Notes under the pieces: model-generated
Database searches by the model: none
What the model saw: the letters and a program-made list of their open reading frames with translations, nothing else
What the model was told of the DNA's origin: nothing
Translations under genes and position numbers: made by a program
Shown: positions 4,235 to 24,635 of the stretch, piece by piece
Numbering within the stretch: the stretch's first letter is position 1
Layout: each line of letters opens with the position of its first letter
IMG/VR virus record: IMGVR_UViG_3300020084_000003
Location: 124,001-188,000 of that record
Length of the DNA: 64,000 bases
Strand: one strand, 5' to 3'

Positions 4235-4485
4235 GGGGAACGGGCGGGGGAAACCCCGCCTTCCTTGTTTCACGTGAAACAATCTCGCAATGAAAAAAGT
4301 TGAAAAAGGGGATTGACCAAAATCAGCAAGGCATGATATTCTGAAATAGAATCAAAAATTTTTTAGATGATTCGCATGAAGATTCTATTTCAGAATATCA
4401 CCGAATCACGATATCCGTCAAGAGGAAAAATCGTTCACGTTTTGTTCTCTATGGGGAAAAAGAAAAAGCCCCGAAGGGCTTGATC

Positions 4486-4764
4486 TTATGCCGCGAGGGC
4501 TTTCATCAAAATGTCTTCAAGTTCGGTTTCTTCCGGTTCATCTTCATAGATGCGGTTTTCCATGAAGAGCGGACCTTGCCACTTGTCCAACATGAAATTG
4601 AATTGCTTGCGGACAAGGCGCATTTTCCACTGAGTCCGAACCGAAATGAATTCGTCCATATAGAAAGAGGTATCAAATTCCATGATTTCCGAAAAAGTCA
4701 TGGCGGCGATTTCCGCGCGGATGGCGACGAAAGCAGCGCGGGCGAGTTTTTTGGATGTAAACAT
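4486..4764 (-). CDS. Hypothetical early protein (MFTSKKLA...)
   Basis: AAAGGA RBS and terminator AAAAAGCCCCGAAGGGCTT. Confidence 0.7.
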   Translation of the reverse strand: MFTSKKLARAAFVAIRAEIAAMTFSEIMEFDTSFYMDEFISVRTQWKMRLVRKQFNFMLDKWQGPLFMENRIYEDEPEETELEDILMKALAA

Positions 4765-4991
4765 GGCTGATCCTTTCCAGATCAAGAGGGTTAAAGCTGG
4801 CCGGAACCTCGTTCCGTTAAGACATAGATAGACCATGATTCTGATTCCCGCAAGAGATATTTTCAACTATTTTTCAGTTATTTTGGGGATTGACGCATTG
4901 CAATATCCTATGATATTCTTCCCGCCAGACCGAATCACGTTCACGTTTTGTTCTCTATAGGGAAAAAGAAAAAGCCCCGAAGGGCTTGATC

Positions 4992-5114
4992 TTATTTTTC
5001 CCAAGGGGCTTTTGGCAGGCTGACCGGTTTTTTCGGGGTTTCCACTACCATCTGCGCGAGTTTGGCATCGGTGGAGTTGAGGGCAGTCACTTGGATCATC
5101 TTTTGAACGAACAT
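4992..5114 (-). CDS. 40-aa peptide, VxLxxxPW-tail family (MFVQKMIQVTAL...PVSLPKAPWEK); not in the ORF track
   Basis: Read by hand. It has an AAGGA RBS, an upstream promoter and a downstream terminator. Confidence 0.7.
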   Translation of the reverse strand: MFVQKMIQVTALNSTDAKLAQMVVETPKKPVSLPKAPWEK

Positions 5115-5488
5115 TTCCGGTCTTCCTTCTCTGGACGCGACCCCTTGCCGCGTTTCCTGATTCCTAGATAGGCCATGATGGCGAGTCGTGCAAGAGGAAA
5201 AATGAAAAAAGTTTGCCCGCCGTAGACCCCTCTATTTTGGCCTGTGACGGGCATTGACGTTTCCGGGTAGGGCGATGCCCCTGTGAGCCTTGCGGGGCTT
5301 CCTACCGCGCCACAGCGACTAGGACGACATACCCCGGACGATCCAGACGTATTTTGTGACGAAAGGAATTGTGCGGATAGTCGGCACGGAATTTCTCGAC
5401 AGTCCGCACAAATAGGTCAGGGAATTGAGTCGCCCATGATACCATCATTTCAACTGTGACAGATGCGAGTCTTGGCTTTTGCATTTTG

Positions 5489-5923
5489 TTATCCCCATTT
5501 ATCAAATAGATTTCGACATTCATTATGCCATTCTTTCACAGATTTATTATATTCCAAATCACCTTTTAGAAATTCAGCATATGAAATTGCATCCTTTTCT
5601 CGGAAGAAAAGGAAATGGGCGTTGTATCCATTAAGCCCGCCGATATTGTAATCTTTAAGTGATCCGCCAGAAGAATATTCTTCACCCGTATATTGTGAAA
5701 TATAGGTATATGCAAAAGAACCTTTTTTGGTAAATGTTTCATCTTCATATTCAACGCCATTAATTTCATTAAATGACGCAATTTTAGTGAAATGTCTTTT
5801 AGCCAAATACCCGCCTTGCGATACTTCCCAAATATCGGAACCAGTGAGCAAATGCATTTGCTCGACTGTTTCAATTGCGCCTTTAGGATATTCCCGCGCA
5901 GTTGTTCCTTTAAGTTTAATCAT
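5489..5923 (-). CDS. Hypothetical protein
   Basis: 144-aa ORF with an AAGGA RBS. Confidence 0.65.
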   Translation of the reverse strand: MIKLKGTTAREYPKGAIETVEQMHLLTGSDIWEVSQGGYLAKRHFTKIASFNEINGVEYEDETFTKKGSFAYTYISQYTGEEYSSGGSLKDYNIGGLNGYNAHFLFFREKDAISYAEFLKGDLEYNKSVKEWHNECRNLFDKWG

Positions 5924-5952
5924 GTCTTTATCCTTTCCCTATATGTGGCCCC

Positions 5953-6219
5953 TTATCGGGACCACTTGCGATTGATGTTCCACTTTTCCACGACGAGTCC
6001 CGTTTCCGTTTCATCCGTCACGATATACGCGACAGTTTTCTTGACGAGGGCGAAACGGGTTTCTTGATTTGGCCCGACAAAAACCAGATGTTTATAATCG
6101 CGAAATTTGTCCTCGGGGAACGCAGTTGCGTTCATATACTCGAAAGTTTTGCCGTGATCTTTTTCCACGAACATTCCGGCGATTTTGTCTTGCGAGATAT
6201 GAGCGGGGGCATAGGACAT
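5953..6219 (-). CDS. Hypothetical protein
   Basis: AGGAG RBS and own promoter. Confidence 0.7.
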   Translation of the reverse strand: MSYAPAHISQDKIAGMFVEKDHGKTFEYMNATAFPEDKFRDYKHLVFVGPNQETRFALVKKTVAYIVTDETETGLVVEKWNINRKWSR

Positions 6220-6337
6220 GGCGCAACTCCTTTTGGCGCGGTGGGTTTATCCTGTGATACATGATTCGCCTGTCCATGTCAAACCATTATTTCGCCTTGA
6301 CGCACGAAACCGTTGTGTGCTAGTCGTGGAAGTCTGA

Positions 6338-6571
6338 ATGGCAAGGAAAGGAATCATTGTGCTGCCCACATATTACGCAATTGATATTGTTACATCTCGC
6401 AAGGGCTTGCTAATGATGGCGCAGTTTCTTGGGCTTATGGCTTACGGAAATGATTTTGTGCAAGGCAATCGCATGATGACATATGACGCGCGAAACAAGG
6501 TTTTGAGCGTTACGATGACAAAACAAGACGCACTAAAACTGTCGGAAAAATTCAACTTTGAGTTCCAGTGA
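6338..6571 (+). CDS. Hypothetical protein, paralog of 13754-13972
   Basis: Shared PTYYA..IVT...GNRM..YD...DAL.LS..FNFEF. A parS site follows immediately. Confidence 0.75.
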   Translation: MARKGIIVLPTYYAIDIVTSRKGLLMMAQFLGLMAYGNDFVQGNRMMTYDARNKVLSVTMTKQDALKLSEKFNFEFQ

Positions 6572-6756
6572 TTTGTTTCACGTGAAACAATAGCCTTAGA
6601 GTCTTCTAGGCAAAAGAACAAAACGTGAACAAGATTAGGGCTTGACAGCATCATGATTCGATGATATTCTGGACTAGAGACTCGAATCTTCTGGTGATAA
6701 AAATCAGGTTTTACTTTTAGAATATCATATCGAATCGGGGTAAGTAAAGGGGCAAA

Positions 6757-7158
6757 TTATGCCCCCTGAGTCTTTCTTATTAGTTCGCCCATTTCATAGC
6801 TGAACCCGTGCGACCAACAAAAGCCTTCCCGGTCATACTTTGAATTAACATCATCCCCCGTGGCGTCAAACTGCCAGCGGATAACATCGCCCACACGGGC
6901 GTTAAGTTGGACGGCGAGGGCATGAACCCCGCGAATCCAATCATTATATCGGCGGGTTTCATCCTCAACCCGTTGCGCCTCATTGCTGGCGAGTTGCGCG
7001 ACAAGGTAAGAATAATCCTCGTCAAAAGCCTCGACCGAAGCCCAGACGTTCCAGCCGCGCGGGCGGCACCCGTAAACGTCTTTGTAAAGATCGGAGTAGC
7101 AATCATCCACGATCATGCAAACGGAACCAGCGGCGAATTCTTGGTCTTGAGCGAACAT
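6757..7158 (-). CDS. Hypothetical phage protein (YSDLYKDVYGCRPRG motif)
   Basis: AAGGA RBS before MFAQ. The motif is typical of a widespread phage hypothetical family. Confidence 0.7.
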   Translation of the reverse strand: MFAQDQEFAAGSVCMIVDDCYSDLYKDVYGCRPRGWNVWASVEAFDEDYSYLVAQLASNEAQRVEDETRRYNDWIRGVHALAVQLNARVGDVIRWQFDATGDDVNSKYDREGFCWSHGFSYEMGELIRKTQGA

Positions 7159-7412
7159 GGCGATCATCCTTTTTTGCACAGTTTTCCCTCGGAGCATCGC
7201 GCCCCGCAACACCTACGTAGCAGGGAATCACCCTGCTTGTCAAGCGTATATGCAAAGAAAAAATCGAATTATTTGGGGTTGACAGGCCGGGCGATTCTAC
7301 GATATTCTGAAATAGAGAGTCTATGCGAATCACTTGGAAGATTCGAGATTCTATTTCAGAATATCACACTCAGATTTCATGTAAAGATAAAAAAAGCCCC
7401 GAAGGGCTTAAT

Positions 7413-7586
7413 TTATGAAAACTCCCGGTCTACTATTTCCAGACGTTCCCAGACTTGCGCCCACGTGGAGTCGGCGGGAAGATCACACAGAAACATTTCC
7501 GCGTGGAACGTTGCATTGTTTGCAACGTCAATGGCTTCTTCCAGCGACAGTTCGGGGCGGGCTTGGACTTGGGCGAGGATGGACAT
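7413..7586 (-). CDS. 57-aa acidic hypothetical protein (MSILAQVQARPEL...)
   Basis: Read by hand. AAGGA RBS and a terminator at 7390-7409. Confidence 0.6.
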   Translation of the reverse strand: MSILAQVQARPELSLEEAIDVANNATFHAEMFLCDLPADSTWAQVWERLEIVDREFS

Positions 7587-7840
7587 TTTCAGTTTCCTTC
7601 AAACATGGTTGGTTCCGAGGACGTTCCCCGTGCCTCATACGTAGCTGATTCTTGTGTTTGTGTCAATATAGGAAAAGCATTATTTTAGTTTATTTTTGGG
7701 GTTGACGTAAAAAGTGAGTATGATATTCTGGACTAGACTCTTGATTCTCGCGTTCACGATTCGTTCTCATTGTGGGTTGTTCACGTTTTGTTCTGTTTCA
7801 CGTGAAACAAAAGCCCCCCGTTTCCGAGGGGCTTTTCCTT

Positions 7841-8071
7841 TTACCAAGGCATCGCGGGGAGGGAGACTTTCGCGGTTGACTTGCGGGCGAGGCGGGCGCG
7901 GGCGGCTTTCGCGTTTTCGATTTCTTCCGCTTTCGTGATCGGAGTATGTTGAAAGCGGACCTTGTTCCCGCCAGCGATCAGAGCGGCCTCTTCCGCTTTG
8001 CTTTTGGGGTTTTTCAGGTGGTGTTGGCTTCCGCGACCGTTGAAGGTATCCAGTTGAACCGCTGCGACCAT
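7841..8071 (-). CDS. Small basic protein, VxLxxxPW-tail family (...VSLPAMPW)
   Basis: Paralog of 4001-4234 in inverted orientation. Confidence 0.8.
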   Translation of the reverse strand: MVAAVQLDTFNGRGSQHHLKNPKSKAEEAALIAGGNKVRFQHTPITKAEEIENAKAARARLARKSTAKVSLPAMPW

Positions 8072-8619
8072 CTTTCCGTTCCTTCCGCTGTGGGCCTCTG
8101 CCCGTTTCCATACTTAAAGAATATGCACTCTTGATCCGATTCGCAACCCCCCAAATGCACTTTTTTGAATCTTTTTTGTTCATGATTTGTTCTCAGGTTT
8201 CGCGGCGAAACTGCGTTCACGTTTTGTTCTTTGGCCCTCTATTTTGCGCTGTGAGCGGCCTTGTGGGTTTTCGGGTGTGTGGGTATGGCAAAAGCCCGTA
8301 GGAACCACCTACGGGCTTCTACGGGCTTGTGAGAGGCATTATCGAAAACCTAGTGCCGCTGCGAAAAACTCCTTGAATAGATCGAAGAAGATTAGCAGAG
8401 GAAGGATTACCGCCATCAGCTTGATGATGAGATAAACCTTTAGTAGTGTGATGAATGCCCCCATCAGGTTGTTTTGAGGATGTAAAGAGCAGCCAGACCC
8501 AGAAATCCAAACGCTACGATGAACAACATATTGTTTTCCTTTCACTTTCCTAGCGGGTTTCACAGACACAACTTGCCAGCATCAAATTGGTTTCATGATG
8601 CTGGCAAGATTCTTCTAAG

Positions 8620-8745
8620 TCACTCGTCTTTCAACTGAAATTTCTTGTGAACCCCCGACTCGTATTGCTTGCGGGCGCTTTTGTTCTTGCGCGCGTTGCG
8701 GATTTGTTGCTTGGCGTTGTTCTTGTCGCGCTTTTGGTCTTTCAT
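8620..8745 (-). CDS. 41-aa highly basic peptide (MKDQKRDKNNAKQQIRNARK...)
   Basis: Read by hand. AAGGA RBS and an upstream promoter. Confidence 0.55.
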   Translation of the reverse strand: MKDQKRDKNNAKQQIRNARKNKSARKQYESGVHKKFQLKDE

Positions 8746-8962
8746 GATCCGGGTTTCCTTCTGTTTCCGGGTTTCTGTATCTTGAATGTATGGGGGGCCA
8801 GATGATTCGTCAATAGGAAAAAATAGGAAAGATTCTTTTTATTTGGGGTTGACAGTGTGGGGTGGGGATAATATTCTGAAATAGAATCCAGAATCATCGT
8901 TCACGATTCGTTCTCATGGGGTTTCGCTGCGAAACTGTTTCACGTGAAACAATGACATTGCC

Positions 8963-9154
8963 CTAAAGCAATGCCATAAGTTGAAACATGATGATGATAG
9001 CAGACAAACAAATAGTAAGAAGAAACGAACAAGTCAAAGCGTTAACTGTATCTTTAGCAATCGCGCAACGGATGCTAAGGTTAAGCAAAATCAACCCCAT
9101 CATGCAAAACGTAGCAGTAGCGCAAGAAGCGATGAAAAGAAGAAAGTGTTCCAT
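8963..9154 (-). CDS. Small two-TM membrane protein
   Basis: Hydrophobic 63-aa ORF flanked by two parS sites. Confidence 0.55.
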   Translation of the reverse strand: MEHFLLFIASCATATFCMMGLILLNLSIRCAIAKDTVNALTCSFLLTICLSAIIIMFQLMALL

Positions 9155-9218
9155 ACTATTTTCCTTTTGTTTCACGTGAAACATAGGGGCGGGATGATCC
9201 CGCCCCCTGTTGATTGCA

Positions 9219-9524
9219 TCAGGCTTGCACCGCTTCCGCTTGTGCAGCACGTTCGGCACGTTTCGCCGCGTTGCGTTCCATCGTGGCAACCCACGTCCGC
9301 GCACGGCCCGTCAGGGCAGGAACATGGCGCGGACGACCACGCTTGCCTTCAATCCGTTGTTCCTGAATCTCGACCAGACCAGCCTCGACCAGTTGCGCCG
9401 TCAGGTGACGCGAAGGGATGTTTTCAGCATCGCCCGCCTTGATCGCGACCAGCGCGGCAAGCTTGGCCTCTTTGCTGTTGAAGGTTGCCGGGCGACCACG
9501 GGCGGCTTTGATTTCTTTCGTCAT
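9219..9524 (-). CDS. AT-hook (RGRP) / winged-helix-like DNA-binding protein, copy 1
   Basis: Two RGRP motifs and the pattern 'PSRH...LVEAGLVE...RGRP..VPALTG'. Paralogs at 13167, 23299 and 25705. Confidence 0.75.
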   Translation of the reverse strand: MTKEIKAARGRPATFNSKEAKLAALVAIKAGDAENIPSRHLTAQLVEAGLVEIQEQRIEGKRGRPRHVPALTGRARTWVATMERNAAKRAERAAQAEAVQA

Positions 9525-11024
9525 GATGTAGTCCTTTCTTTGCTGTTGGGCGTCTTGCCCGTTTCCATGATTAAGAGATAGAGCATGATTCTGATTCGTG
9601 CAAGCACAAAATGCGATAGGAACGAAAATAGTTTTTGCATCTTCTCGGCAAAAGAACAAAACGTGAACGAATAGGTTTCGCGGCGAAACCACGACGCAAT
9701 GAGAACGAATCATGAACGGTGATTCTGGATTCTATTTCAGAATATCATACTCAGGTTTAGTGTCAACAAGAAAAAAAGCCCCGAAGGGCTTTTCCTCATT
9801 CCATGAAGTTTTCAAATTCTGTCCAGCTATATTCTTCCGCAACCCCATAGGTTTCTTGGAATTGCTTGAACTCACGTTCTGCCGCATCGTGCGAAAGATT
9901 GTAGTGGGTGAGCAGGAGGTTCATAATGTCTGCGGGCGAGAGCATGGCGGGTTCCTTTCCCTTGGCTATGATTAAGATATAGCATCAGATTGTGATTCGT
10001 GCAAGAGGTAAAATGACTTTTTTCAAATTATTTTTGGGGTTGACAGGATAGGGGAGGGGATGATATTCTGAAATAGAATCAAGAATCACCGTTCATGATT
10101 CGTTCTTATAGGTTTCGCCGCGAAACTGTTTCACGTGAAACAAAAGAAAGAGGGGGCGTTATGCCCCCTGTTTCCATCCTTCTGCGATTTTTTCTTGCAT
10201 ATCATCAAATGCGATATGTTTGGGGATAACGGTTTGCGTCATAGCTTTACCATCCCAATACAGAGTCGCAGTTACATCTTCGTGCCCGAAAGTGGACTCG
10301 TAGGTGATTTTGAGGTTGGAGTTGGTAATAGTAATCATGGCGGGGTTCCTTTCCTTTGCCGATTATTCTTTATAGCATTAGCGGCAGGTTGCGTCAACAG
10401 GAAAATGCGTCACCAGATAGATCAAATGAATCCTTTCACAATGTGCGGATTCTTTGAAATAGTGATTTGTTGCTTTGATGAAAGCAAACCGGAACGGGCG
10501 AAATGCCAGACGTTTATTGCGATAGACACGGGAACAGATAGGTTCCCAACGGAAACCGCGCAGAAACTTGTGGTTCCACTCGCAGGAACGATAGTAATGA
10601 GTCAAGTCGCGCATTGCCTTATCTCCTGCTAGGGTTTCCATCTATATTTATAGTTGCACGATTCGGGTGTCTATGTCAATATCTAAAAAATAATTGTGAC
10701 GCGAACATGACACTTGCAAACAACCTAAACGGGTGCTAAGGTTCTGGCAGTTGTAACGAAAGGAGCGAATCATGTTTGATATTGTCAAGAAAATAATTAC
10801 ATTCCCCGGAAAATTTGTCGATTGGTTTGAGGCGGAACGTGGAACTGGTGAAGGAAAAAATGGTTGGGTAGGTAAACCATCGCGGGACTAGGGAGGATGA
10901 AAGACTCCTCTTTTCCCTATTGACAGCATGGGGAGGGCATGATATTCTGAAATAGAATCTTGATTCTTGCGTTCATGATTCGTTCTTTTGCGGATAAAAG
11001 AAAAAGCCCCGAAGGGCTTTCCTG

Positions 11025-11213
11025 TTACCAAGGGGCTTTTGCCAGAGTGACTTTGACTTTCCGCTTTGCCGCTGCGCGTTTCTCTTGAGCCAGAGCGAAA
11101 GCCTTTTCATCTTTTGCGGTAATGGCAGGAGCGGCACAATTTCCGCAACGCTTCTCAAAATCGACCCGGTTCATGTTAGCGTGGGAATTGAAGTATTGAG
11201 CGGAGACTTGCAT
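11025..11213 (-). CDS. Small basic protein, VxLxxxPW-tail family (...KVTLAKAPW)
   Basis: Own promoter, RBS and terminator. Shared C-terminal motif. Confidence 0.75.
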   Translation of the reverse strand: MQVSAQYFNSHANMNRVDFEKRCGNCAAPAITAKDEKAFALAQEKRAAAKRKVKVTLAKAPW

Positions 11214-11318
11214 CGGGTTGCCCTTTCTTGGCTGGTGTAATTATAGAATATGCCTTGCCAGATGATTCGTCAACAGGAAAAATGAAGTTTTTTGAATCTT
11301 TTTTGTTCACGGTTTGTT

Positions 11319-11837
11319 CTATATATAACCATGTTCCCGTTCTGCTTCATTTCTAGCAACTATTGCATCATCCAATTCTTTGAATCTTCCTATATGTTTT
11401 CTTTTACCATTTCCATCTCTAATTCTGACAACATAAGCATTTTTGAAAAAGTATATATTTCTTTCTTTTAACTTATTAGGTTTAACTACATTTTTATAAT
11501 TAATACTTTGTGAAACATCTCTAAGATTTTTTATTCTATTATCTTTTTTATCTTTATTAATATGATCTATCTCACATTTAGGCCATTCGCCGTAAACAAA
11601 AGCCCACGCTAATCTATGTGCGGAACAAATAATTTCATTATCCGCATATCCCAAATATATGTAACCATTTTTGTTAGACCCTGCAATTTTACCAGAATAC
11701 TCATTATTCCAATTAAGTTTTCTTTTAGTATTATATGGACGATGGTGTTCTTTTCTTTCTTTCCAATAAAATAATCCAGTATCTTTATTATAAGAAACTA
11801 GTTCTTTCCATAATTCTAAATTAGAATCACTTTTCAT
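11319..11837 (-). mobile_element. Freestanding HNH homing endonuclease with a C-terminal AP2-like domain
   Basis: 'AHRLAW..VYGEWP..EIDHINKDKKDNRIKNLR' and 'HIGRFKELDDAIVARNEAE'. AT-rich relative to its flanks. Confidence 0.85.
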
Positions 11838-11883
11838 GCTATACTCCTTTTTATTCGGAGCATAGCATGAAAATATTAAATTG

Positions 11884-11976
11884 TCAATCCTTCCAAGGAT
11901 AGGGCGGGAGGCTGACGGGCTTGCTCGACTCTTTCTGCGAGGCAAGGGCTTGAGCGATTTTCTTTTGCTTGGACAT
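11884..11976 (-). CDS. 30-aa peptide, VxLxxxPW-tail family (MSKQKKIAQALASQKESSKPVSLPPYPWKD); not in the ORF track
   Basis: Read by hand. AAGGA RBS and an upstream promoter. Confidence 0.65.
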   Translation of the reverse strand: MSKQKKIAQALASQKESSKPVSLPPYPWKD

Positions 11977-12190
11977 TCGGGCTTTCCTTCTGCTTTCCCG
12001 TTTCCTTATCTAATAGATAGCCCATCCCAACATGATTCGCAAGAGGTATGATGCAGATTCTTTTTTTATTTTGTGCATTGACAGGTTGCGGGGTTGTGTG
12101 ATATTCTGCGCGACCAATTGACCAGATGATTCGTTGTTTCACGTGAAACATAAAGAAAAGGGCAGAGGTTTACCCCCTGCCCCTATGCCT

Positions 12191-12622
12191 TTACAATGCC
12201 CGCAGCCATTCCAGAACGTCGCCGGGAACCTCTTTCCGCAGCCATGCGCTGCCGTATGTGTAGGGCTTGCCGTTGTGCAGATAGGTTGCATCGTGCAAAA
12301 TATCGGCGGGCATTTGTTCCAGAATGTCTTGATATGCCCGCACCCCAGATTGTGCAATCCATGCCTCTTGCGCGGGTGATCCTGCCGTCAAGTCATTCAG
12401 ATGCCAATCTTTCCAGATTTGGTAAAGTTTGGCAATCTTACCAACAGTCCAGCCCGGCGCAGTTTCCGTGATGTTAAGCAGTTCATCACGGATTTGTCCA
12501 TAGGCAATGTTTCCGACATTGCCGCAAATCGACAGATTGTCGCCTTCTTTAATTCCAATTTCCACCACGACCGGGCGATGGTCGATTTTGCCGATAGTGA
12601 GTTTCTTGAACATTTTTCGCAT
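12191..12622 (-). CDS. Hypothetical phage protein (WHLNDLTAG...Y.YGSAWL motif)
   Basis: GAGG RBS and cassette promoter. Confidence 0.75.
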   Translation of the reverse strand: MRKMFKKLTIGKIDHRPVVVEIGIKEGDNLSICGNVGNIAYGQIRDELLNITETAPGWTVGKIAKLYQIWKDWHLNDLTAGSPAQEAWIAQSGVRAYQDILEQMPADILHDATYLHNGKPYTYGSAWLRKEVPGDVLEWLRAL

Positions 12623-12756
12623 CCTCTTGTTTGCGTGTGATTCTGTTATGCCATATCTCTTCCGAGTCGTCAATCATTTTCTTTCTATTGACACCCTGCC
12701 CCTTCCCATGATATTCTGCGCGGCCAGACGAATCAGTAAAAAGAAAAGTGTGGCAA

Positions 12757-12975
12757 TTATGCCACACTCAACTCCGTAATCTTGCAGGGAAATACTTCTT
12801 CCGTTGTCATGAAACCGCCGAAGTGAACCTCGATGCCGAACCAATGATTCGGATTCATTCCTTCCGGCAGAGGATCAATCTTGACCACGCGACCCGTTGA
12901 ACCTGCGGGGATCGGCTCGACCCCTTCAATGATGACCAGCGGAACGATGTTCTTGACGATGGAACCAACTTGCAT
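12757..12975 (-). CDS. Small beta-rich hypothetical protein
   Basis: AGGAG RBS and cassette promoter. Confidence 0.65.
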   Translation of the reverse strand: MQVGSIVKNIVPLVIIEGVEPIPAGSTGRVVKIDPLPEGMNPNHWFGIEVHFGGFMTTEEVFPCKITELSVA

Positions 12976-13166
12976 TTTGTTCTCCTGTTTCTGATGATTC
13001 TGTTATGCCATATCCATTCCGAGTCGTCAACATTTTTCTTTCTATTGACAGGTTGCGGGGTTGTGTGATATTCTCGCCCGCCCTGCCCCTGCCCGATTCG
13101 CATTGGAATGTTTCACGTGAAACAAAAGCAAGAGGGGCAAGGTTTCCCCTGCCCCTCTCTCTTGTC

Positions 13167-13457
13167 TTAGGCTTCCGCCTTGGCAGCGCGACGGGCCGCG
13201 TTGCGTTCCATAGTCGCAAGCCACGAACGGGCTTTGCCGGTCAGGGCAGGGACATGAGCGGGACGGCCACGCTTGCCAGTAGGTTCCGCCGTTTTCATCT
13301 CGACCCGGCCCATCTCGACCAGTTTCAGCAGCAGATGGCGCGAGGGGATGTTCTCAGCATCGCCCGTATGGATGGCGCGGAGTGCAGCCACGATGGCGTC
13401 ACGGTTGGCGAAAGTAGCGGGACGGCCACGGGCGGCTTTGGTTTCGGTGTTGGTCAT
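13167..13457 (-). CDS. AT-hook (RGRP) / winged-helix-like protein, copy 2
   Basis: Close paralog of 9219-9524. Confidence 0.75.
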   Translation of the reverse strand: MTNTETKAARGRPATFANRDAIVAALRAIHTGDAENIPSRHLLLKLVEMGRVEMKTAEPTGKRGRPAHVPALTGKARSWLATMERNAARRAAKAEA

Positions 13458-13753
13458 GAGGTAGTTCCTTTCTCGTTTGTGGGCGTCTTGCCCGTTTCCA
13501 TGAACTATAGATGCCACATGGATTCGATTCGTGCAAGAGGAAAAATGACTTCCAAGCGAAAAAAGTTGTAAGCCGTTGAAAGTAAACGGAAACTTTCTTT
13601 TCTTTATGAGAATCACCCCATGCGCGGGCGCGAGAGAATATCACAAGGAACGGGCATGGGTCAAGGGTAAAAATGATTTGGTGCAATTGAACTTTGGGGT
13701 TGTGCTTGCGTTGGGGATGTGTCAGAACTGACAGGACGCAACAACAGAAGGAA

Positions 13754-13972
13754 ATGAGATTGCATCCCACCTATTACGCTTTAGGTATCGTGACGGATGC
13801 GCGAGGACTTCAACGGATGGCAACTTTTCTTAATCTAACCAAATGCGGCAACACTTTTGCAAATGGTAACAGGATGCTACAATATGATAAAGAAAACAAT
13901 CTTTTGCTCTTGAACTCGACAAAAGATGATGCCTTGAGACTCAGCGCACGATTCAACTTTGAGTTTGAATGA
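13754..13972 (+). CDS. Hypothetical protein, paralog of 6338-6571
   Basis: Sequence similarity. Followed by a terminator and a parS site. Confidence 0.75.
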   Translation: MRLHPTYYALGIVTDARGLQRMATFLNLTKCGNTFANGNRMLQYDKENNLLLLNSTKDDALRLSARFNFEFE

Positions 13973-14173
13973 AAGAAAGAAAGAGGCAGGGGAAACCCTG
14001 CCTCTTTTGTTTCACGTGAAACAGTTTCGCAGCGAAACCACCGAATCACTTTTCACGTGAACGCGGGAGAATATCAAATAAATAACTATAGGTCAACAGG
14101 AAAGATTGAGTTGACAAACCGTTCTGGTTGTGCGAGTATTGGAATCAGAACTCAAACATGAAAGGAATCGAAA

Positions 14174-14377
14174 ATGATTGTTATCGTGGAACATATGGAT
14201 AAACAAAATCCTGATGGGCGCTATATGAAAGACGTTATCACCAATGCAAAAGCAGCGGAATCGTTCCTCGGGCAAGTCAATATGTCCAACAAAAACAAGG
14301 GCAAGGGCGAGGCTCAGGCGGGTGACGTGATCGGAAACTTGCGTATCGTGAAAATTTCCGAGAAAAATAAAGCTTGA
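14174..14377 (+). CDS. Small hypothetical protein
   Basis: TTGACA promoter and AAAGGA RBS. Confidence 0.65.
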   Translation: MIVIVEHMDKQNPDGRYMKDVITNAKAAESFLGQVNMSNKNKGKGEAQAGDVIGNLRIVKISEKNKA

Positions 14378-14430
14378 CGCGAATCAGGGATTAGGGCATG
14401 ATGGAATCACATCAACAAAGGAAACCAGCC

Positions 14431-14616: not shown

Positions 14617-14958
14617 GACACCATCGCACAAGACCTCAGAAGCCCGCCTAGTGCGGGTTTCTTGCTTTTGTGGGTCTACCTACCAGAGCAGCATAACGCG
14701 GCTCACAGGGCAATTTTTAGGGGGTTGACACTACGGGCAGAGGTATGATATTCTCCGCGACTTTTTCCAATAGTGATTCGTATTTCGCTTTTCTTTCAAT
14801 ATAGATTAATGCGTCACAATATCTTTTTGAATATTTAATGTAAGCATCACATTCTTTAATTAAACGAATTAATTCTAATTCATCCATTTAATTCTCCTTT
14901 TCTCTCCTGATCTATTTATGAGAAAAGGAAAAGGGGCATTTCTGCCCCTTCCTGTTTC

Positions 14959-15330
14959 CTATGCGCTGATCTTTTCCAGCACTTCTTTTTGATTGGCAAT
15001 CGCCTTGTCCAGAGCATCATTGATGAACATGGCAACGGCAGGAACCTTGTCAGGTCCGCACAGCGTGACAGCCGCAAGCCCTTCGGCATCTTCACGGGTG
15101 AACATGGGGGCAAAGGTAATGCCCGTCACGTGCCCTTTCAAGACTTCGCGGCGACCATTCACGGCAGGGGCGAAATCGTAATCCATGCCCATGCCCGCGA
15201 CAGGATTCCACACAACCCAACCGTGCGAGACAATCGAGTTTTTGATTTTGCGGGCTTCACATTTTGCGATGAACTCGGCGGCATCCTTGGAAACCATATC
15301 GCGCAGAGCCTTGGCTTGTTCTTCGGTCAT
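14959..15330 (-). CDS. Hypothetical early protein
   Basis: Cassette promoter with AAAGGAACCC RBS. Confidence 0.7.
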   Translation of the reverse strand: MTEEQAKALRDMVSKDAAEFIAKCEARKIKNSIVSHGWVVWNPVAGMGMDYDFAPAVNGRREVLKGHVTGITFAPMFTREDAEGLAAVTLCGPDKVPAVAMFINDALDKAIANQKEVLEKISA

Positions 15331-15517
15331 TTCTGGGTTCCTTTCCCTTTGCTGATGATTCTTTATCTCACATCCCAAACGATTCGAAAAGCGAAAATTG
15401 ACATAGGGGCCAATTTTTTATAGTATTGACACTATACCCTCTCCTATGATATTCTTCCGCGCCCATATAGAGAGTGATTCGAAAAGGGTGTGACATTTCT
15501 GCCACACCCTCGGTAGG

Positions 15518-15781
15518 TTAGGCAAGTTTCCTTGCCAGCCTCTCTTGATATTGTTGCATCCGTTGTTCTGCGAACGTGATGCAGCCGACTCCCACCATAC
15601 CGAACTTTACCGCGTTGACTTGTGCGCGGATGTAGGTTGCATTAAGTTTCCGAAGAAACTTCGTGGCGGGGTCGTTGTTTGCCACTTCACCCCACAGAGA
15701 CGAGTCTTGGCTGACGTTCTCTTCATAGTAGTCGATGCGGGCGAACATTGCTTTGCAGAGGTCATTGAAGTTGCGGATCAT
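15518..15781 (-). CDS. Hypothetical early protein
   Basis: Same cassette leader as 14959. Confidence 0.7.
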   Translation of the reverse strand: MIRNFNDLCKAMFARIDYYEENVSQDSSLWGEVANNDPATKFLRKLNATYIRAQVNAVKFGMVGVGCITFAEQRMQQYQERLARKLA

Positions 15782-15955
15782 CTTTTGGGTTCCTTTCCCT
15801 TTGCTGATGATTCTTTATCTCATATCCCAAATGATTCGGAAAGCGAAAAATGACTGACAGAAACACTTTTTTCGAATCACCCAATGCAAAGGCGGCGCAG
15901 AATATCACACTCAGACTAGCAGTCAAGAAGAAAAAAGGGGATTGCTCCCCTTCCT

Positions 15956-16273
15956 TCACAGGTTCCACATTTCCAGAATTGCATGGGCTTGCTTTACCGC
16001 ATCCCGGTCAAGGTGCCATGATGGGACTCCACCTTCAAGATTCAGTCCCGTTCCCCGCACTGTTTTGAAAGTGTCCAGATTGTAACGGGAAACAAATTGC
16101 CCGAGGATCGTGTCACCAATTTTGTCAAACCGATAAAGAATGTCGTAAAACTCAACCATCGGTTCATCTTTTTCGTGGGTGAGTTGCATCTTATGGCCGT
16201 AGCAGTCGCCTTTTTCCACAACGCGCATGTTGAAGGCTTCACCGCTTTTGTTCTGGATAGTTGCGAGTTTCAT
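15956..16273 (-). CDS. Hypothetical phage protein
   Basis: Same cassette leader. 'VEFYD..Y....GQFVSRY' motif. Confidence 0.7.
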   Translation of the reverse strand: MKLATIQNKSGEAFNMRVVEKGDCYGHKMQLTHEKDEPMVEFYDILYRFDKIGDTILGQFVSRYNLDTFKTVRGTGLNLEGGVPSWHLDRDAVKQAHAILEMWNL

Positions 16274-16364
16274 CTGTTGGGTTCCTTTCCCTTTGCTGAT
16301 GATTCTTTATCGCATAGCAGAAACGATTCTGCAATAGTAAAAGGGGGCATTGCTGCCCCCTTTT

Positions 16365-16655
16365 TCATCCCATTGGAGTCATTGTCCTGATCCCGAAAAT
16401 GATTCCGTCGATGTAAGTTGCCATTTCCGACGCATTGACACGACGCGAGAGAGGGCCGAACGTGGACTCGCCCGTGGACTCTTCCATTTCCCGCAGGATA
16501 TAACCGCCATAAATGGGGGCATGATCCAGCTTGATGTGGCCCACGTTTCCGTCAAACGTGCCGTTTGCGTTGCGGGTATAGGGCGTTTCGGGACGGTTCA
16601 GAATCTTGTTCAGGCGGGTAACTTTCGCTTCCAGTTCTTTTTTAGTAACGCGCAT
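16365..16655 (-). CDS. Hypothetical early protein
   Basis: Same cassette leader. Confidence 0.7.
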   Translation of the reverse strand: MRVTKKELEAKVTRLNKILNRPETPYTRNANGTFDGNVGHIKLDHAPIYGGYILREMEESTGESTFGPLSRRVNASEMATYIDGIIFGIRTMTPMG

Positions 16656-16824
16656 TTGGGTTCCTTTCCCTTGCTGATGATTCTTTATCGCATATCCGAA
16701 AGCAGATTGCAAGAACTTTTTTGGGGTTGACGATACATCCCTTCCCATGATATTCTCCCGCTCCAACTGCCTAGATGATTCGTTGTTTCACGTGAAACAT
16801 AAAAGAAAAGAGGGGCAATGCCCC

Positions 16825-18418: not shown

Positions 18419-18478
18419 CTTTGCAATCCCTTGTTTTGTGTTTCTGTGATTCCTTTTTACAGGAACCACATTGACTTG

Positions 18479-20784: not shown

Positions 20785-20827
20785 GCAAAAAATCTACCAT
20801 GTGATTCTCTGCATGTCAACACCTATT

Positions 20828-21815: not shown

Positions 21816-21972
21816 CTGCTTTCTCCTTTGCTTGTGTGATTCTCTTATGCCATATTCATTTCCGATTCGCAAGTGAAAAGTTGCGCTTGACATTATTTCT
21901 TCTGGATGATATTCTCACGCGCACGATTCGAATCGAAAAAGAGGTGTGACATTTCTGCCACACCTACTTCTT

Positions 21973-22344
21973 TCATTTTTTGCGCTTTTGATTATACTTG
22001 ACCCGCGCACCGCGATCAAGCCACTCTTGCGGAGTCCAGACTCCTAGTTCGGAATAATCCTCTCCTTCCGCCAGAGGACGCAATTCTGCCGTTTTATAGG
22101 CTGCGCCCATTTCGGTTGCGCCATTGTAGTTTTCCGACAGGGTTGCATAAAGCCCATGATCCGCTTCCCCATCCGTATAGACGTTCTGCCACGCATAGGA
22201 ACGCGCACGATGCGAGGGAATGAAGCCATTCGGAATGACGCATTCCATGAACGAATAAGGGCAATCATCCTTGCCCATTTCGATGCGGGCACTAGGCCAG
22301 TTGCCGTCATTTCCGTTGCCCATCCGAAGAAGAAACTGAGCCAT
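21973..22344 (-). CDS. Hypothetical protein
   Basis: AGGAG RBS and cassette promoter. Confidence 0.7.
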   Translation of the reverse strand: MAQFLLRMGNGNDGNWPSARIEMGKDDCPYSFMECVIPNGFIPSHRARSYAWQNVYTDGEADHGLYATLSENYNGATEMGAAYKTAELRPLAEGEDYSELGVWTPQEWLDRGARVKYNQKRKK

Positions 22345-22715
22345 GCTAAACTCCTTTTGCTGGCGTTTCGTATGATTCTGTTATGCCATGCCAGAAACGA
22401 TTCGTCAACAGCAAAATTAAATTGAAAGAATGTTTTTTCGAATCACCCTTTCAAAACGCGCGGCAGAATATCATGGCGGCTGCGCTAGGTCAACAAGAAA
22501 AAACCGTGACATTTCTGCCACGGCTTGATTACTTCTGAACAATCTCTATTCCTTTGTCTCTCATATTCTCAATTATTGAACCCATGCCATAAGTCAATCC
22601 TGATAGCCATTTCATAGCCTTTTCTGGGTCTTTGGTCGTTTGCACTGGCATATCATTGCAGATGGAAACATAATCGTCACCATCTTTTTCAATTATATAT
22701 CTTCCGGTTGGTATC

Positions 22716-23072
22716 TCAATATCCATTATTTTTATTTTTTGCATAATCATAGTCCTCTATATTTTTGTGACTATCAAGCAAATTAGGATGCGTCGTCACT
22801 AGGGTTTTTCTTTCTTTATCATAAACCAAAGGGATAATTCCATCAATATTACTAAGGATTAACGCATAGACTGACAAACGGTTGCTTTGTTTCGCACGAA
22901 AAGATGCCACTACAGCAACATTGTGCCCATTGAAGCTGACGTTCTGTCTCTTGCCCGTGTGAATGGCTTTTACAATCGCGTTATAGCCATCGTTGTTGAT
23001 AGTGAGGCCATAGCGTTCTTTGAGCCGATTCTTGAAGTGATTTTTCTGACAATTTGCTTTGTTGGGTCGCAT
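22716..23072 (-). CDS. Hypothetical protein with an H-F-x-x-R-x-x-E-R motif (possible RelE-like fold)
   Basis: HFKNRLKERYG...LVTT. The fold assignment is inference. Confidence 0.5.
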   Translation of the reverse strand: MRPNKANCQKNHFKNRLKERYGLTINNDGYNAIVKAIHTGKRQNVSFNGHNVAVVASFRAKQSNRLSVYALILSNIDGIIPLVYDKERKTLVTTHPNLLDSHKNIEDYDYAKNKNNGY

Positions 23073-23298
23073 GAAGTCCTGCCTTTCTTTGTTGACTTTT
23101 GTTGTTGCATCCAAGATAGGCAATTTGGTCACACAGTTCAACAGGAAAGAGATTCGCCATATTATTTCGATCTATTGCCATTGACATTGTTATTGATTCG
23201 CGATATTCTCTGCACCCTGACGAATCACAAATGAATAGGTGTGACATTTCTGCCACACCTATTTTTCTTAAAAGAAAAGGGCCGACTGGCCCTTGACT

Positions 23299-23706
23299 TT
23301 ATTCTTCGGGGTTGGACGAAACGTCAGCGAAATCTTCCGATTCGGCTTCGGCAGCGGCAGCAGCTTGCGCGGCCTTTTCCTCTGCCTTGGCGCGGTTGCG
23401 TTCGATCAGCTTGACCCACGAATTGCCCTTGCCAGTCAGCGACGGGACCAGAGCGGGACGGCCACGGCCACGGGTTTCGCCTTCCGCCAGCGTGGCAGCT
23501 TCCAGCTTGACCATGCCCTCTTCAACCAGTTGCTTGACGATGAAGCGCGACGGCATCTTGTCAGCGTTGCTATCGCGGATTGCGACCAGAAGATCAAACT
23601 TGCTGTCGCGATCAGCCAGCGTGGGCTTGCGGCCATTGTTGGCGCGACCATCGGTTTTGACTTCGGCTTGAGCGGCGACTTCGTTGGTTTCAACTTGAGC
23701 GTTCAT
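23299..23706 (-). CDS. AT-hook / winged-helix-like protein, copy 3
   Basis: PSRF..KQLVEEGMV...RGRGRP..VPSLTGKG. GC-rich codon usage. Confidence 0.75.
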   Translation of the reverse strand: MNAQVETNEVAAQAEVKTDGRANNGRKPTLADRDSKFDLLVAIRDSNADKMPSRFIVKQLVEEGMVKLEAATLAEGETRGRGRPALVPSLTGKGNSWVKLIERNRAKAEEKAAQAAAAAEAESEDFADVSSNPEE

Positions 23707-24635
23707 GATGTAGTTCCTTTCTTTCTGGGTTGCGGCGTCATTGCCTGTCTCTTTCGATGATTAAGATATAGACGATGATTCTGATTCGCACAAGAGGAAA
23801 AATGCAGATCAGCAAACTTTTTTTCGAATCGGTCCAGATGAAAAGCGCGGGAGAATATCACTGGATAGATTCATTGTCAACAGCTATTTTTGTTTCACGT
23901 GGAACAATGTCAAACAAAAAAGGTGTGACATTTCAGCCACACCTTCCAGTAGTTATAATCTGATATGTTTTTCTTTCAAAAATTACTTCAATCCCGCATT
24001 GCTGCACCGCCAATAGTTTTAAAGAAAGAAAAGTTAGAAGTATCCCTAGAAAAATAGTTTTTGCCCAAAAATTCATTTTGCATTTTGTCCCTTTCAAATG
24101 AAGAAAAATAACACCCATAAAAAATAACCTGAAATAATTACTGTTACTATCCCCACAATAACAGCAATTAATCCCATATAAAATGTTAAAGTGTGAAATC
24201 TAACACCCATGAAATAAATGCCACCAAATATCAAATATAGTGACAAAACAAATGCCACCCCTATTAGAATAAAATAAAAGATGGCAAATGTTTCTATCAT
24301 TTCATATTCTTTCCACAGAAGTTATTTCTAACCCATGATTCGTCAGTATGTTATACACCATTCTCTCACAGGTTGCAACCTCTTTCCATAGAAAGCGCCA
24401 CTCTTGAAGATGCTTCACACGAAGCACATCCTCAACAGCAACGTCTAGATCACGTGGGTTGTTCTTGCTATAACAACAGAAAACATTCATCTTTGGTTCC
24501 CTTTCATAGCTGATGATTCCATTCTAATCTATTTAGAATCAGAAGTCAACTCTTGACAATGAAAGTGGTTAATGATATTCTCTCAAACTGATTCGCCATA
24601 GAAGAAAGGTGTGACATTTCTGCCACACCCCATTT

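What the first reader, a model, noticed from the sequence alone, without database searches (positions are those of the whole stretch)
4266..23906. Eleven chromosomal-type parS sites in a lytic phage
Seen: 10 perfect TGTTTCACGTGAAACA plus one variant, all intergenic, with no parA/parB in the window. Established: this is the conserved chromosomal ParB loading site, normally present in only a few origin-proximal copies, and in Caulobacter ParB-parS links to PopZ, MipZ and SMC. Inference: the phage loads host ParB to position or coat its DNA, or drains ParB from the host centromere to stall segregation and division.
Basis: partly seen in the sequence, partly recalled or inferred. Interest (0 to 1): 0.8.

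Follow-up and report, generated by a model that had tools for sequence, protein, structure and literature searches.

The report
Host-type parS cluster in jumbo phage
A 285-kb T4-like lytic phage from lake water carries eleven copies of the exact DNA site on which bacterial chromosomes load the segregation protein ParB, with no ParB gene in the half of its genome that could be read, so it most likely borrows the host's ParB, as the small Bacillus phage phi29 is already known to do.

Summary
There are 10 exact copies of TGTTTCACGTGAAACA and one copy with a single mismatch at window 4266-23906, against 0.07 expected by chance, and no copies with 2-3 mismatches. The core is 99% identical between copies, while the flanks are about 30% identical, which is roughly random. 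As RNA the palindrome folds weakly (-3.9 kcal/mol). Together these point to a protein-binding DNA site under strong selection.

The window belongs to a 284,776-bp T4-like jumbo phage from lake metagenomes. The sites lie in a 20-kb, GC-richer hyperplastic early region built from repeated promoter/terminator cassettes. Nine of the eleven sit just past the terminator of a small gene and in the path of a convergent strong sigma-70-type promoter.

No ParB or ParA gene was found in the window or in 145 kb (51%) of the genome. A GapR homolog, and GcrA boxes on 39 of 47 of these promoters, point to an alphaproteobacterial host.

The closest precedent is phi29, which has five parS sites bound by host Spo0J plus Spo0A boxes on its early promoters. 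I read this as a new variant of that kind: host ParB is loaded onto a phage centromere-like domain. What the phage gains (tethering or partition, ParB titration, or silencing) is not resolved.

The parts
4266..4281 (.). parS site 1 (exact 16-mer)
   Evidence: It lies 31 nt after the stop of the + gene 4001-4234, just past terminator 4242-4261. A convergent P1(-) promoter at 4392-4421 is 110 nt away.
6574..6589 (.). parS site 2 (exact)
   Evidence: It lies 2 nt after the stop of the + gene 6338-6571. A convergent P1(-) at 6719-6748 is 129 nt away.
7794..7809 (.). parS site 3 (exact)
   Evidence: P1-like(+) 7702-7729 ends 64 nt upstream. A bidirectional hairpin (about 7810-7836) and the stop of the - gene 7841-8071 follow.
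8936..8951 (.). parS site 4 (exact), abutted by palindrome GTTTCGCNGCGAAAC at 8921-8935
   Evidence: P1(+) 8849-8877 ends 58 nt upstream.
9168..9183 (.). parS site 5 (exact)
   Evidence: It is followed by GC hairpin 9186-9206 and the stop of the - gene 9219-9524, 35 nt away.
10127..10142 (.). parS site 6 (exact), abutted by palindrome at 10112-10126
   Evidence: P1(+) 10040-10069 ends 57 nt upstream. The - strand terminator 10151-10169 and the stop of gene 10159-10338 follow.
12135..12150 (.). parS site 7 (exact)
   Evidence: P1(+) 12078-12107 ends 27 nt upstream, and the GcrA box TGATTCG ends 1 nt before the site. The - strand terminator 12158-12184 folds at -29 kcal/mol, z -4.8. The stop of gene 12191-12613 is 40 nt away.
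13109..13124 (.). parS site 8 (exact)
   Evidence: P1(+) 13045-13074 ends 34 nt upstream. The - strand terminator 13130-13159 and the stop of gene 13167-13457 follow.
14008..14023 (.). parS site 9 (exact), a mirror-image cassette abutted by a palindrome at 14024-14038
   Evidence: The + gene 13817-13972 is followed by hairpin 13980-14007 and then the site. The convergent P1(-) 14068-14096 is 44 nt away.
16784..16799 (.). parS site 10 (exact)
   Evidence: P1(+) 16727-16756 ends 27 nt upstream, and the GcrA box ends 1 nt before the site. The - strand terminator 16810-16826 and the stop of gene 16825-17079 follow.
23891..23906 (.). parS variant (A12G, one mismatch)
   Evidence: It lies 10 nt outside the -35 of P1(-) 23852-23880 and 16 nt before a variant of the second hairpin family at 23923-23942. 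It is 7.1 kb from the other ten sites.
4266..16799 (.). Core parS domain: ten exact sites in 12.5 kb, median spacing 1142 bp
   Evidence: The spacing is within the roughly 2-kb spreading range reported for Caulobacter ParB per site (PMC5815017).
3275..39131 (.). Hyperplastic early region built of repeated cassettes
   Evidence: It holds about 50 copies of TTGACA-N16-TGATATTCT (P1), mostly on the + strand; small ORFan genes, mostly on the - strand; GC-rich or GTGTGACATTTCTGCCACAC hairpin terminators; and GC of 0.40-0.50 in the 4-26 kb part against 0.35-0.38 for most of the rest of the window. The P1 motif is absent from the flanking loci.

Best explanation
The eleven palindromes are real chromosomal-type parS sites, kept exact by selection. 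They lie in the hyperplastic early region of a 285-kb T4-like lytic jumbo phage whose host is probably an alphaproteobacterium. The phage shows no ParB of its own, so the sites most likely nucleate the HOST ParB. ParB dimers would bind each 16-mer, close into CTP clamps and slide about 1-2 kb. Sites spaced about 1.1 kb apart would then merge into one ParB-coated, centromere-like domain of about 15-20 kb on every phage genome. By analogy with phi29 (parS/Spo0J plus Spo0A boxes), I propose that this domain tethers or partitions the phage chromosome through the host ParA/pole machinery while the early programme is gated by the host cell cycle. The gating would work through GcrA boxes, that is, methylated GANTC sites read by the GcrA-sigma70 holoenzyme. 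Once the phage DNA replicates, hundreds of extra strong parS copies would also pull ParB off the host centromere. What is shown: the identity, number, invariance and placement of the sites; the absence of ParAB in 51% of the genome; the T4-like nature of the phage; and the alphaproteobacterial signals. What is inferred: ParB occupancy, that the ParB is the host's, and everything downstream.
For: The 16-mer equals the universal ParB site. There are 10 exact copies and 1 near-exact copy against 0.07 expected, and no intermediate variants. The core is 98.9% identical between copies, against 30% in the +-40-nt flanks. That is sequence-level constraint, not structure-level constraint. The neighbouring hairpin families, by contrast, vary in sequence with compensating changes, and one of them pairs fully only in the minus-strand RNA. 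As RNA, parS folds at only -3.9 kcal/mol. No ParB/ParA Pfam hit is on record for any called gene over contig 95.9-240.8 kb, and there is no GERRxRA box in six frames. The sites form one discrete cluster, with none in about 81 kb of flanks. The median spacing of 1142 bp fits the roughly 2-kb spread per site and the need for clustering reported for Caulobacter ParB (PMC5815017). Host signals are a GapR_DNA-bd homolog (E 1.8e-19; nearest genome hit a Hyphomicrobiales MAG) and an excess of YGAKTCG boxes: 73 against 14.5 expected (z 15), with 39 of 47 P1 promoters carrying one at +4..+33. That is the window reported for GcrA-activated promoters (PMC9976885). There is a precedent in phi29, which has five parS sites, Spo0J-dependent spore entrapment and Spo0A boxes on its early promoters (PMC2731898, PMC9437464). 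My blind IMG/VR scan for the 16-mer picked up phi29-like podoviruses with 3-6 sites, so the motif search does find a known ParB-borrowing family. The sequence is not an assembly artefact, because identical sequence was assembled independently from other samples and by another assembler, although only the two JGI contigs span the repeat region and the Logan contigs break inside it.
Against: There are no binding data. The host is unidentified, and 49% of the genome is unread, so a phage ParB cannot be excluded. No diverged relative was found, so conservation across phages could not be tested. Seven to nine of the sites lie 27-129 nt downstream of a near-consensus promoter aimed at them. Heavy transcription could keep ParB off the sites, or this placement could mean their real role is transcriptional. 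Some copies share cassette ancestry (the pairs 12135/16784 and the trio 8936/10127/14008), so the eleven are not eleven independent events. Base modification of the phage DNA, which is common in T4-like phages, could block ParB and was not assessed. The phi29 rationale (spore entrapment) does not transfer directly to a non-sporulating host.
Confidence: 0.6

Rival explanations
1. ParB sponge as the selected function. The sites exist mainly to drain host ParB from the chromosomal centromere, and with it MipZ, SMC loading and PopZ anchoring. This would stall segregation and division, a host-takeover device made of DNA alone.
For: The sites are ten perfect, highest-affinity copies. In Caulobacter, a low-copy plasmid with one strong parS cuts viability about 1000-fold, and a plasmid with two is lethal (PMC5815017). 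A replicating phage would supply hundreds of copies, and host ParB is essential in at least some alphaproteobacteria. The host signals are alphaproteobacterial.
Against: Titration does not need tight clustering in one 12.5-kb domain, nor a fixed place in the cassettes. It works only after replication, when the host is already doomed. T4-like phages usually shut the host down with proteins. It may simply be a side effect of any ParB loading.
Confidence: 0.25
2. Transcriptional device. ParB bound at parS (or its sliding clamps) acts as a roadblock or silencer for the convergent P1 promoters, or for the whole early region. This would resemble silencing by P1 ParB or KorB, with the host ParB level serving as an input.
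For: Nine of eleven sites sit 27-129 nt (one further site 290 nt) downstream of a P1 aimed at them and directly outside the terminator of the opposing gene. In two cassettes the GcrA box ends 1 nt from parS. In the right half of the region the same slot is filled by a hairpin terminator family instead. In the P1 direction most of the GC hairpins lack a good U-tract, so a protein roadblock would fill a gap.
Against: Chromosomal ParB is at best a weak repressor in most species studied (established knowledge). The intergenic spaces here are so crowded that any intergenic site would lie near a promoter. Sites 8936 and 23891 do not fit the full pattern. About 35 other P1 promoters manage without parS.
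Confidence: 0.15
3. The phage has its own ParB (or a whole ParABS) in the unread 49% of the genome. The cluster would then be the centromere of a phage partition system, for example for a plasmid-like carrier state.
For: Only 145 of 285 kb could be read. ParB-domain proteins are common in phages (established knowledge). The cluster is as dense as a chromosomal centromere.
Against: Partition loci normally keep parS next to parAB, and nothing of that kind lies within 30 kb to the left or 90 kb to the right of the cluster. The site is the host-universal consensus rather than a private one, which would cause incompatibility with the host system. T4-like phages are not known to be maintained as plasmids. 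No replication-initiator, integrase or repressor domain is on record in the part read.
Confidence: 0.12
4. Not ParB at all. The palindrome would be a site for an unknown phage regulator, an RNA hairpin, or a recombination hotspot of the mobile cassettes, and its identity with parS would be coincidence.
For: It is embedded in PeSL-like repeated cassettes, which are known to recombine (PMC2839356). A second parS-like palindrome, GTTTCGCNGCGAAAC, abuts three of the sites.
Against: The chance that an arbitrary 16-bp palindrome equals parS is about 1 in 65,000. The RNA hairpin is weak (-3.9 kcal/mol) and shows no compensatory variation, unlike the true hairpins. No Rfam family matches.
Confidence: 0.06
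5. Artefact: bacterial origin-region DNA was mis-joined into a phage contig.
For: The region is GC-richer than the rest, and Logan assemblies break at its edge.
Against: The same sequence was assembled at 100% identity from two JGI samples and two Logan runs, and the phage is present in 11 lake runs. The sites sit inside phage-specific cassettes whose promoter family continues to 39 kb among T4-type genes. The genes in the region are phage ORFans, HNH, TreK-like and g100-like proteins.
Confidence: 0.02

Closest known systems
phi29-family parS sites bound by host Spo0J (Meijer et al. 2005, as described in PMC2731898 and PMC9437464)
   Same: It is a virulent phage without its own ParB that carries several copies of the host chromosomal parS. 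It also carries binding sites for a host master regulator on its early promoters (Spo0A boxes there, GcrA boxes here). Host ParB acts on phage DNA.
   Different: phi29 is a 19-kb protein-primed podovirus of a spore-forming Firmicute. Its five sites are spread along the genome, and their purpose is spore entrapment. Here the phage is a 285-kb T4-like myovirus whose probable host is a non-sporulating alphaproteobacterium. It has eleven sites packed into 20 kb, built into promoter/terminator cassettes. No function has been shown.
Chromosomal parS clusters (e.g. seven Caulobacter sites within about 10 kb; PMC5815017)
   Same: The 16-mer is identical, the clustering is dense with kb-scale spacing, and a merged ParB spreading zone is expected.
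   Different: The cluster is not on a chromosome, has no adjacent parAB, and its relation to an origin is unknown. The sites lie in transcribed leaders of strong promoters.
PeSL cassettes of T4-type hyperplastic regions (PMC2839356, PMC4122927)
   Same: Both have strong sigma-70-like promoters with a T/A-rich upstream tract plus stem-loop terminators, repeated tens of times between ORFan genes in a hyperplastic region of a T4-like genome.
   Different: PeSL promoters point into the next gene. Here most P1 promoters point at the 3' end of the neighbouring gene. PeSLs are not described as carrying parS or GcrA boxes.
Prophage-plasmid partition systems (P1, P7, N15 ParABS/SopABC)
   Same: Both are phage DNA carrying a centromere bound by a ParB-family protein.
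   Different: Those phages encode their own ParA/ParB and use private parS sequences for stable plasmid inheritance. Here no ParAB was found, and the site is the host's.
CtrA-box 'lytic deferment' in alphaproteobacterial phages (PMC9437464)
   Same: Both involve co-option of a host cell-cycle regulator's sites in phage promoter regions.
   Different: No CtrA box occurs here. The sites here are GcrA/CcrM-type and ParB-type.

Membership tests
Chromosomal-type parS (ParB/Spo0J loading site) | 16-bp palindrome matching tGTTNCACGTGAAACa | tested here: met
   10 exact copies and 1 with one mismatch.
Chromosomal-type parS (ParB/Spo0J loading site) | Bound by ParB, with CTP-dependent loading and spreading | not testable with these tools
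   This needs EMSA/BLI or ChIP-seq.
Self-contained ParABS partition locus | parA and parB encoded on the same replicon, usually next to parS | tested here: not met
   No ParB/ParA Pfam hit and no GERRxRA box in contig 95.9-240.8 kb, which includes 30 kb to the left and 90 kb to the right of the cluster. The remaining 49% is unread, so this is provisional.
phi29-type borrowing of host ParB by a virulent phage | Virulent phage with multiple host-type parS and no own ParB | tested here: met
   T4-like lytic gene set, 11 sites, and no ParB in the part read.
phi29-type borrowing of host ParB by a virulent phage | Early promoters carry sites for a host master regulator that gates the lytic cycle | tested here: inconclusive
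   An analogous feature is present: YGAKTCG GcrA boxes on 39 of 47 P1 promoters at +4..+33. No gating has been shown, and most P1 promoters are antisense to genes.
phi29-type borrowing of host ParB by a virulent phage | Spore-forming host and spore entrapment of the genome | tested here: not met
   The host signals are alphaproteobacterial (GapR homolog; GcrA boxes), and such hosts do not sporulate (established knowledge).
PeSL cassettes of T4-type phages | Repeated strong sigma-70-like promoter plus stem-loop terminator between ORFans in a hyperplastic region | tested here: met
   About 50 P1 copies, two hairpin families, and ORFans with no PHROG match.
PeSL cassettes of T4-type phages | Promoter followed by the Shine-Dalgarno sequence and start of the downstream gene | tested here: not met
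   Most P1 promoters face the 3' end of the neighbouring gene. A second, weaker promoter family (TTGACGAATC..GCATAAAG) precedes the genes.
T4-like (Straboviridae-type) myovirus | T4 core genes: gp23, portal, sheath, gp32, gp59, gp41, UvsX, gp33, rIIA/rIIB, Dda | tested here: met
   Pfam and PHROG hits.

The most novel reading that the evidence does not exclude
A strictly lytic jumbo phage of a non-sporulating Gram-negative host assembles a host-ParB centromere on its own early region and wires the same region to the host cell cycle through GcrA/CcrM-dependent promoters. This would give it a cell-cycle-gated 'wait, be carried along, then lyse' programme, or alternatively a DNA-only weapon that strips ParB from the host centromere. 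Borrowing of host ParB by virulent phages would then be a general strategy that has arisen independently, not a peculiarity of phi29 and sporulation.
Probability: 0.35. Interest if true: 0.85.

Novelty: new variant of a known kind. Interest (0 to 1): 0.7.

Why it matters
The only documented case of a virulent phage carrying host-type parS is the phi29 family, where it serves spore entrapment. Finding a denser, perfectly conserved cluster in an unrelated 285-kb T4-like phage of a probable alphaproteobacterium would show that borrowing the host centromere protein is a convergent phage strategy. It would also raise the question of what ParB does for a lytic phage when there is no spore to hide in. 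In alphaproteobacteria, ParB is tied to polar anchoring, MipZ-controlled division and SMC loading, so the answer bears on how phages position their DNA or disable the host cell cycle. The case is directly testable with existing Caulobacter tools: ParB ChIP-seq, CFP-ParB and MipZ imaging, and the toxicity of plasmid-borne parS. The co-occurring GcrA boxes would be, as far as I could find, an undescribed use of the CcrM/GcrA epigenetic module by a phage.

Tried and rejected
- Near-identity searches of two window stretches (4-17 kb and 45-64 kb) against GenBank phages found nothing. Caulobacter phage Cr30 is in that collection, so it is not the source.
- The best protein relatives are only 42-51% identical, from Ruegeria, Rhodobacter, Rhizobium and Bordetella phages.
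- I looked for diverged relatives to test conservation. rIIB in IMG/VR returned only the source contig. The P1+parS pattern returned only the source plus one chance hit. A neighbouring 145-aa protein found only itself among 5.8 billion proteins. The ORFans next to the sites have no PHROG family.
- A 16-nt scan for the second hairpin family was too short and gave mostly chance hits.
- Laying contigs of four other lake runs on the region showed the same strain with no differences at the sites, so it gave no population variation to exploit.
- Two encoding-contig look-ups were lost to wrong gene boundaries.
- Walking the contig reached only 51% of it.
- The GapR scan of bacterial genomes gave a single 42% hit, enough for a class-level hint but not for a host.
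- CtrA boxes: none. Rfam: none. tRNAs: none.
- I rejected the RNA-hairpin or terminator reading of parS, chance, and misassembly.

Full report
**1. The observation**

A search with up to two mismatches finds exactly eleven sites. Ten are the perfect 16-mer TGTTTCACGTGAAACA, at 4266, 6574, 7794, 8936, 9168, 10127, 12135, 13109, 14008 and 16784. One has a single change, at 23891. Dinucleotide-preserving shuffles give 0.07 sites.

No site in the 64 kb has two or three mismatches. The five with four mismatches are what chance gives. So the family is all-or-none.

With the copies anchored on the core and oriented by cassette, the core is 98.9% identical between copies. The 40 nt on either side are 30% identical, which is about random.

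As RNA the palindrome folds at only -3.9 kcal/mol. The GC-rich hairpins beside it fold at -29 kcal/mol, with z = -4.8 on the minus strand. A second hairpin family (GTGTGACATTTCTGCCACAC, about 15 copies) varies in its stem with compensating changes. It pairs fully only in the minus-strand RNA, where it has a G.U pair instead of an A.C mismatch; it folds at -18.3 against -11.4 kcal/mol. The real hairpins therefore behave like RNA structures, and parS behaves like a protein-binding DNA site.

**2. What the genome is**

rIIB maps at 100% identity to IMGVR_UViG_3300020084_000003, which is JGI contig Ga0194110_10000009, 284,776 bp long. Window base 1 is contig base 124,004. The contig comes from lake-water metagenomes.

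The same sequence, at 100% identity, was assembled in a second JGI sample and in two Logan assemblies. Eleven lake runs hold it. This excludes a mis-join.

The gene content is that of a T4-like myovirus:
- rIIA, rIIB, Dda, DNA ligase and RNA ligase in the window;
- gp23, prohead protease, portal, tube and sheath to the left;
- ribonucleotide reductase, thymidylate synthase/DHFR, gp32, gp59, UvsX, gp41, the gp33 late coactivator and large fibre-like proteins to the right.

No close relative exists in GenBank phages. Cr30 is present in that collection and does not match. The best protein hits are 42-51% identical.

**3. Where the sites sit**

The stretch from about 3.3 to 39 kb is a hyperplastic region of small ORFan genes, almost all on the minus strand. 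My own model and the JGI gene calls agree on this, and the ORFans tested have no PHROG family.

The region is built from repeated cassettes. About 50 copies of a near-consensus sigma-70-type promoter, TTGACA-N16-TGATATTCT (P1), carry a T-rich upstream tract. A weaker promoter family (TTGACGAATC...GCATAAAG) precedes the genes. Terminator hairpins complete the cassettes.

This matches the PeSL concept described for T4-type phages (PMC2839356, PMC4122927), with one difference. Most P1 copies point at the 3' end of the neighbouring gene instead of into a gene.

For parS, nine of eleven sites lie 2-42 nt beyond the stop of a gene whose 3' end faces them, with the terminator hairpin between the stop and the site. 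Nine of eleven have a P1 promoter aimed at them from the other side at 27-129 nt. In the right half of the region, the same slot is filled by the second hairpin family.

The ten perfect sites span 12.5 kb, with a median spacing of 1142 bp. No further site occurs in about 81 kb of flanking genome.

**4. Whose ParB**

Pfam hits on record for every called gene between contig 95.9 and 240.8 kb (51% of the genome, including the whole window) show no ParB, ParA or SMC-type domain. My own Pfam and PHROG scans of the larger window ORFs agree. No GERRxRA box appears in six-frame translation. The other 49% could not be reached with the look-ups allowed.

**5. Host clues**

A gene 16 kb left of the window encodes a GapR-type DNA-binding protein (E 1.8e-19, above Pfam's threshold). 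From my own knowledge, this family is characteristic of Alphaproteobacteria and their phages. The only bacterial-genome hit is a Hyphomicrobiales MAG at 42% identity.

Independently, GAATC/GATTC is enriched in 4-27 kb (153 against 79 expected). The extended motif YGAKTCG occurs 73 times in 3-27 kb against 14.5 expected (z 15), and 39 of 47 P1 promoters carry one centred at +4 to +33. YGAKTCG is the methylated GANTC subset recognised by GcrA, and +5 to +30 is one of the two windows reported for GcrA-activated promoters (PMC9976885). The weaker promoter family carries the box over its -35 region.

These two signals make an alphaproteobacterial host with the CcrM/GcrA module likely.

**6. Precedent**

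A blind IMG/VR scan for the 16-mer returned more than 119 stretches, mostly with a single copy. The low-GC contigs with three to six intergenic copies turned out to be phi29-like podoviruses, with the phi29 capsid protein, Gp16 ATPase, protein-primed polymerase, tail knob and pre-neck appendage.

That led to the literature. The phi29 genome has five parS sites. Host Spo0J is involved in moving the phage genome into the prespore, and Spo0A boxes on the early promoters suspend the lytic cycle (PMC2731898; also PMC9437464). So a virulent phage that borrows host ParB is a known kind.

No report of the same thing in a T4-like phage or a Gram-negative host turned up in ten full-text searches. Those searches cover only the open-access library.

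**7. Mechanism**

The best-supported reading is that host ParB nucleates at each site, forms CTP clamps and spreads. Caulobacter ParB spreads about 2 kb per site and relies on clustered sites (PMC5815017). The spacing found here would therefore merge into one ParB domain of 15-20 kb.

By analogy with phi29, I favour tethering or partition of the phage chromosome during a cell-cycle-gated early phase. ParB titration would be an unavoidable second effect: plasmid-borne strong parS cuts Caulobacter viability about 1000-fold (PMC5815017).

The fixed position of the sites in front of convergent promoters keeps a roadblock or silencing role open. These three functions are not separable with sequence alone.

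I put 0.6 on 'real parS sites that load host ParB', about 0.8 on ParB-family binding of any origin, and no more than 0.3-0.4 on any one downstream function.

**8. Caveats**

- There are no binding data.
- The host is unknown.
- Half the genome is unread.
- No diverged relatives are available.
- DNA modification, which is common in T4-like phages, could interfere with ParB binding and was not assessed.
- Some sites share cassette ancestry, so they are not eleven independent events.

**9. Verdict**

The novelty is a new variant of a known kind: phi29-type use of host ParB, here in an unrelated jumbo phage and host lineage, combined with PeSL-like cassettes and GcrA boxes. Interest is 0.7.

Noticed in passing
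window 3275-39131 (e.g. 12078-12107, 19669-19698, 29165-29194): About 50 copies of a near-consensus promoter, TTGACA-N16-TGATATTCT, occur here. Most lie on the + strand while the genes are on the - strand, so most fire into the 3' end of the neighbouring gene. They would make either about 50-100-nt RNAs that end at the hairpin or antisense RNAs. The purpose is unexplained. The motif is absent from the flanking loci examined (about 81 kb beyond the window).
   Followed up: partly
window 3000-40000, e.g. 12127-12133, 16776-16782, 19646-19652: GcrA-type boxes (YGAKTCG, a subset of CcrM GANTC sites) occur 73 times against 14.5 expected in 3-27 kb. They lie at +4..+33 of 39 of 47 P1 promoters and over the -35 of the second promoter family. 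This suggests phage promoters read by the host GcrA-sigma70 holoenzyme on methylated DNA.
   Followed up: partly
window 12746-29754 (15 copies, e.g. 18046-18069, 23237-23260): Hairpin family GTGTGACATTTCTGCCACAC has a strand asymmetry: an A.C mismatch in + strand RNA becomes a G.U pair in - strand RNA (-11.4 against -18.3 kcal/mol). The outer stem shows compensatory changes. It is a terminator tuned for the - strand genes and fills the slot that parS cassettes fill further left.
   Followed up: partly
window 8197-8211, 8921-8935, 9675-9689, 10112-10126, 14024-14038: A 15-nt palindrome, GTTTCGCNGCGAAAC, has the same outer arms as parS but a different centre and odd spacing. Three copies abut a parS site directly. 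It is not expected to fit a ParB dimer in register, and its role is unknown.
   Followed up: no
L244:11677-11937 (contig about 104.1 kb, 16 kb left of the window): A phage-encoded GapR-type nucleoid protein (PF10073, E 1.8e-19). The nearest bacterial-genome hit is a Hyphomicrobiales MAG at 42% identity.
   Followed up: partly
window 46740-48008 (-), 48425-48868 (-): A 422-aa protein has a Pfam hit on record to Gad2, the anti-Gabija nucleotidyltransferase family. Beside it is a Macro-domain protein. These are likely counter-defence genes.
   Followed up: no
window 11319-11837 (-), 27592-28197 (+); L242:334-867: Several HNH_3 homing-endonuclease-type genes, one of them in the middle of the parS cluster. 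A GIY-YIG/NUMOD3 gene lies at L247:7539-8264.
   Followed up: no
window about 4483: Two independent Logan assemblies (contigs of 26,950 and 105,012 bp) end exactly here, at the repeated terminator AAAAAGCCCCGAAGGGCTT. The cassette region breaks short-read assemblies, so similar regions may be missing from many metagenomic phage genomes.
   Followed up: partly
L046, L093, L013, L064, L070, L006/L020/L105 (IMG/VR contigs): phi29-like podovirus contigs from metagenomes carry 3-6 intergenic host-type parS sites, often right beside ribosome-binding sites or as tandem pairs. No GERRxRA-type ParB lies in the stretch fetched. The phi29 trait seems widespread in that family.
   Followed up: partly
whole window: GATC is about half as frequent as expected in both parts of the window (58 against 111, and 98 against 172). 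CTNAG is also depleted. This could reflect avoidance of restriction sites.
   Followed up: no
window 8894-9092, 12078-12276, 13073-13271 in lake runs X3, X6, X7, X11: Contig depth spikes 5- to 30-fold exactly over parS sites, with loose ends starting at the site borders. Other, more abundant organisms in the same water carry the identical 16-mer, as expected for bacterial chromosomes.
   Followed up: no
L122:4193-5900, L242:6056-9575, L244:13563-14657: The phage carries a full NAD salvage set: a PnuC-type NMN transporter, an AAA_28 NadR-like protein, NAMPT, an NMNAT-NUDIX protein and NAD synthase. It also has a Thg1-like protein and two RNA ligases.
   Followed up: no
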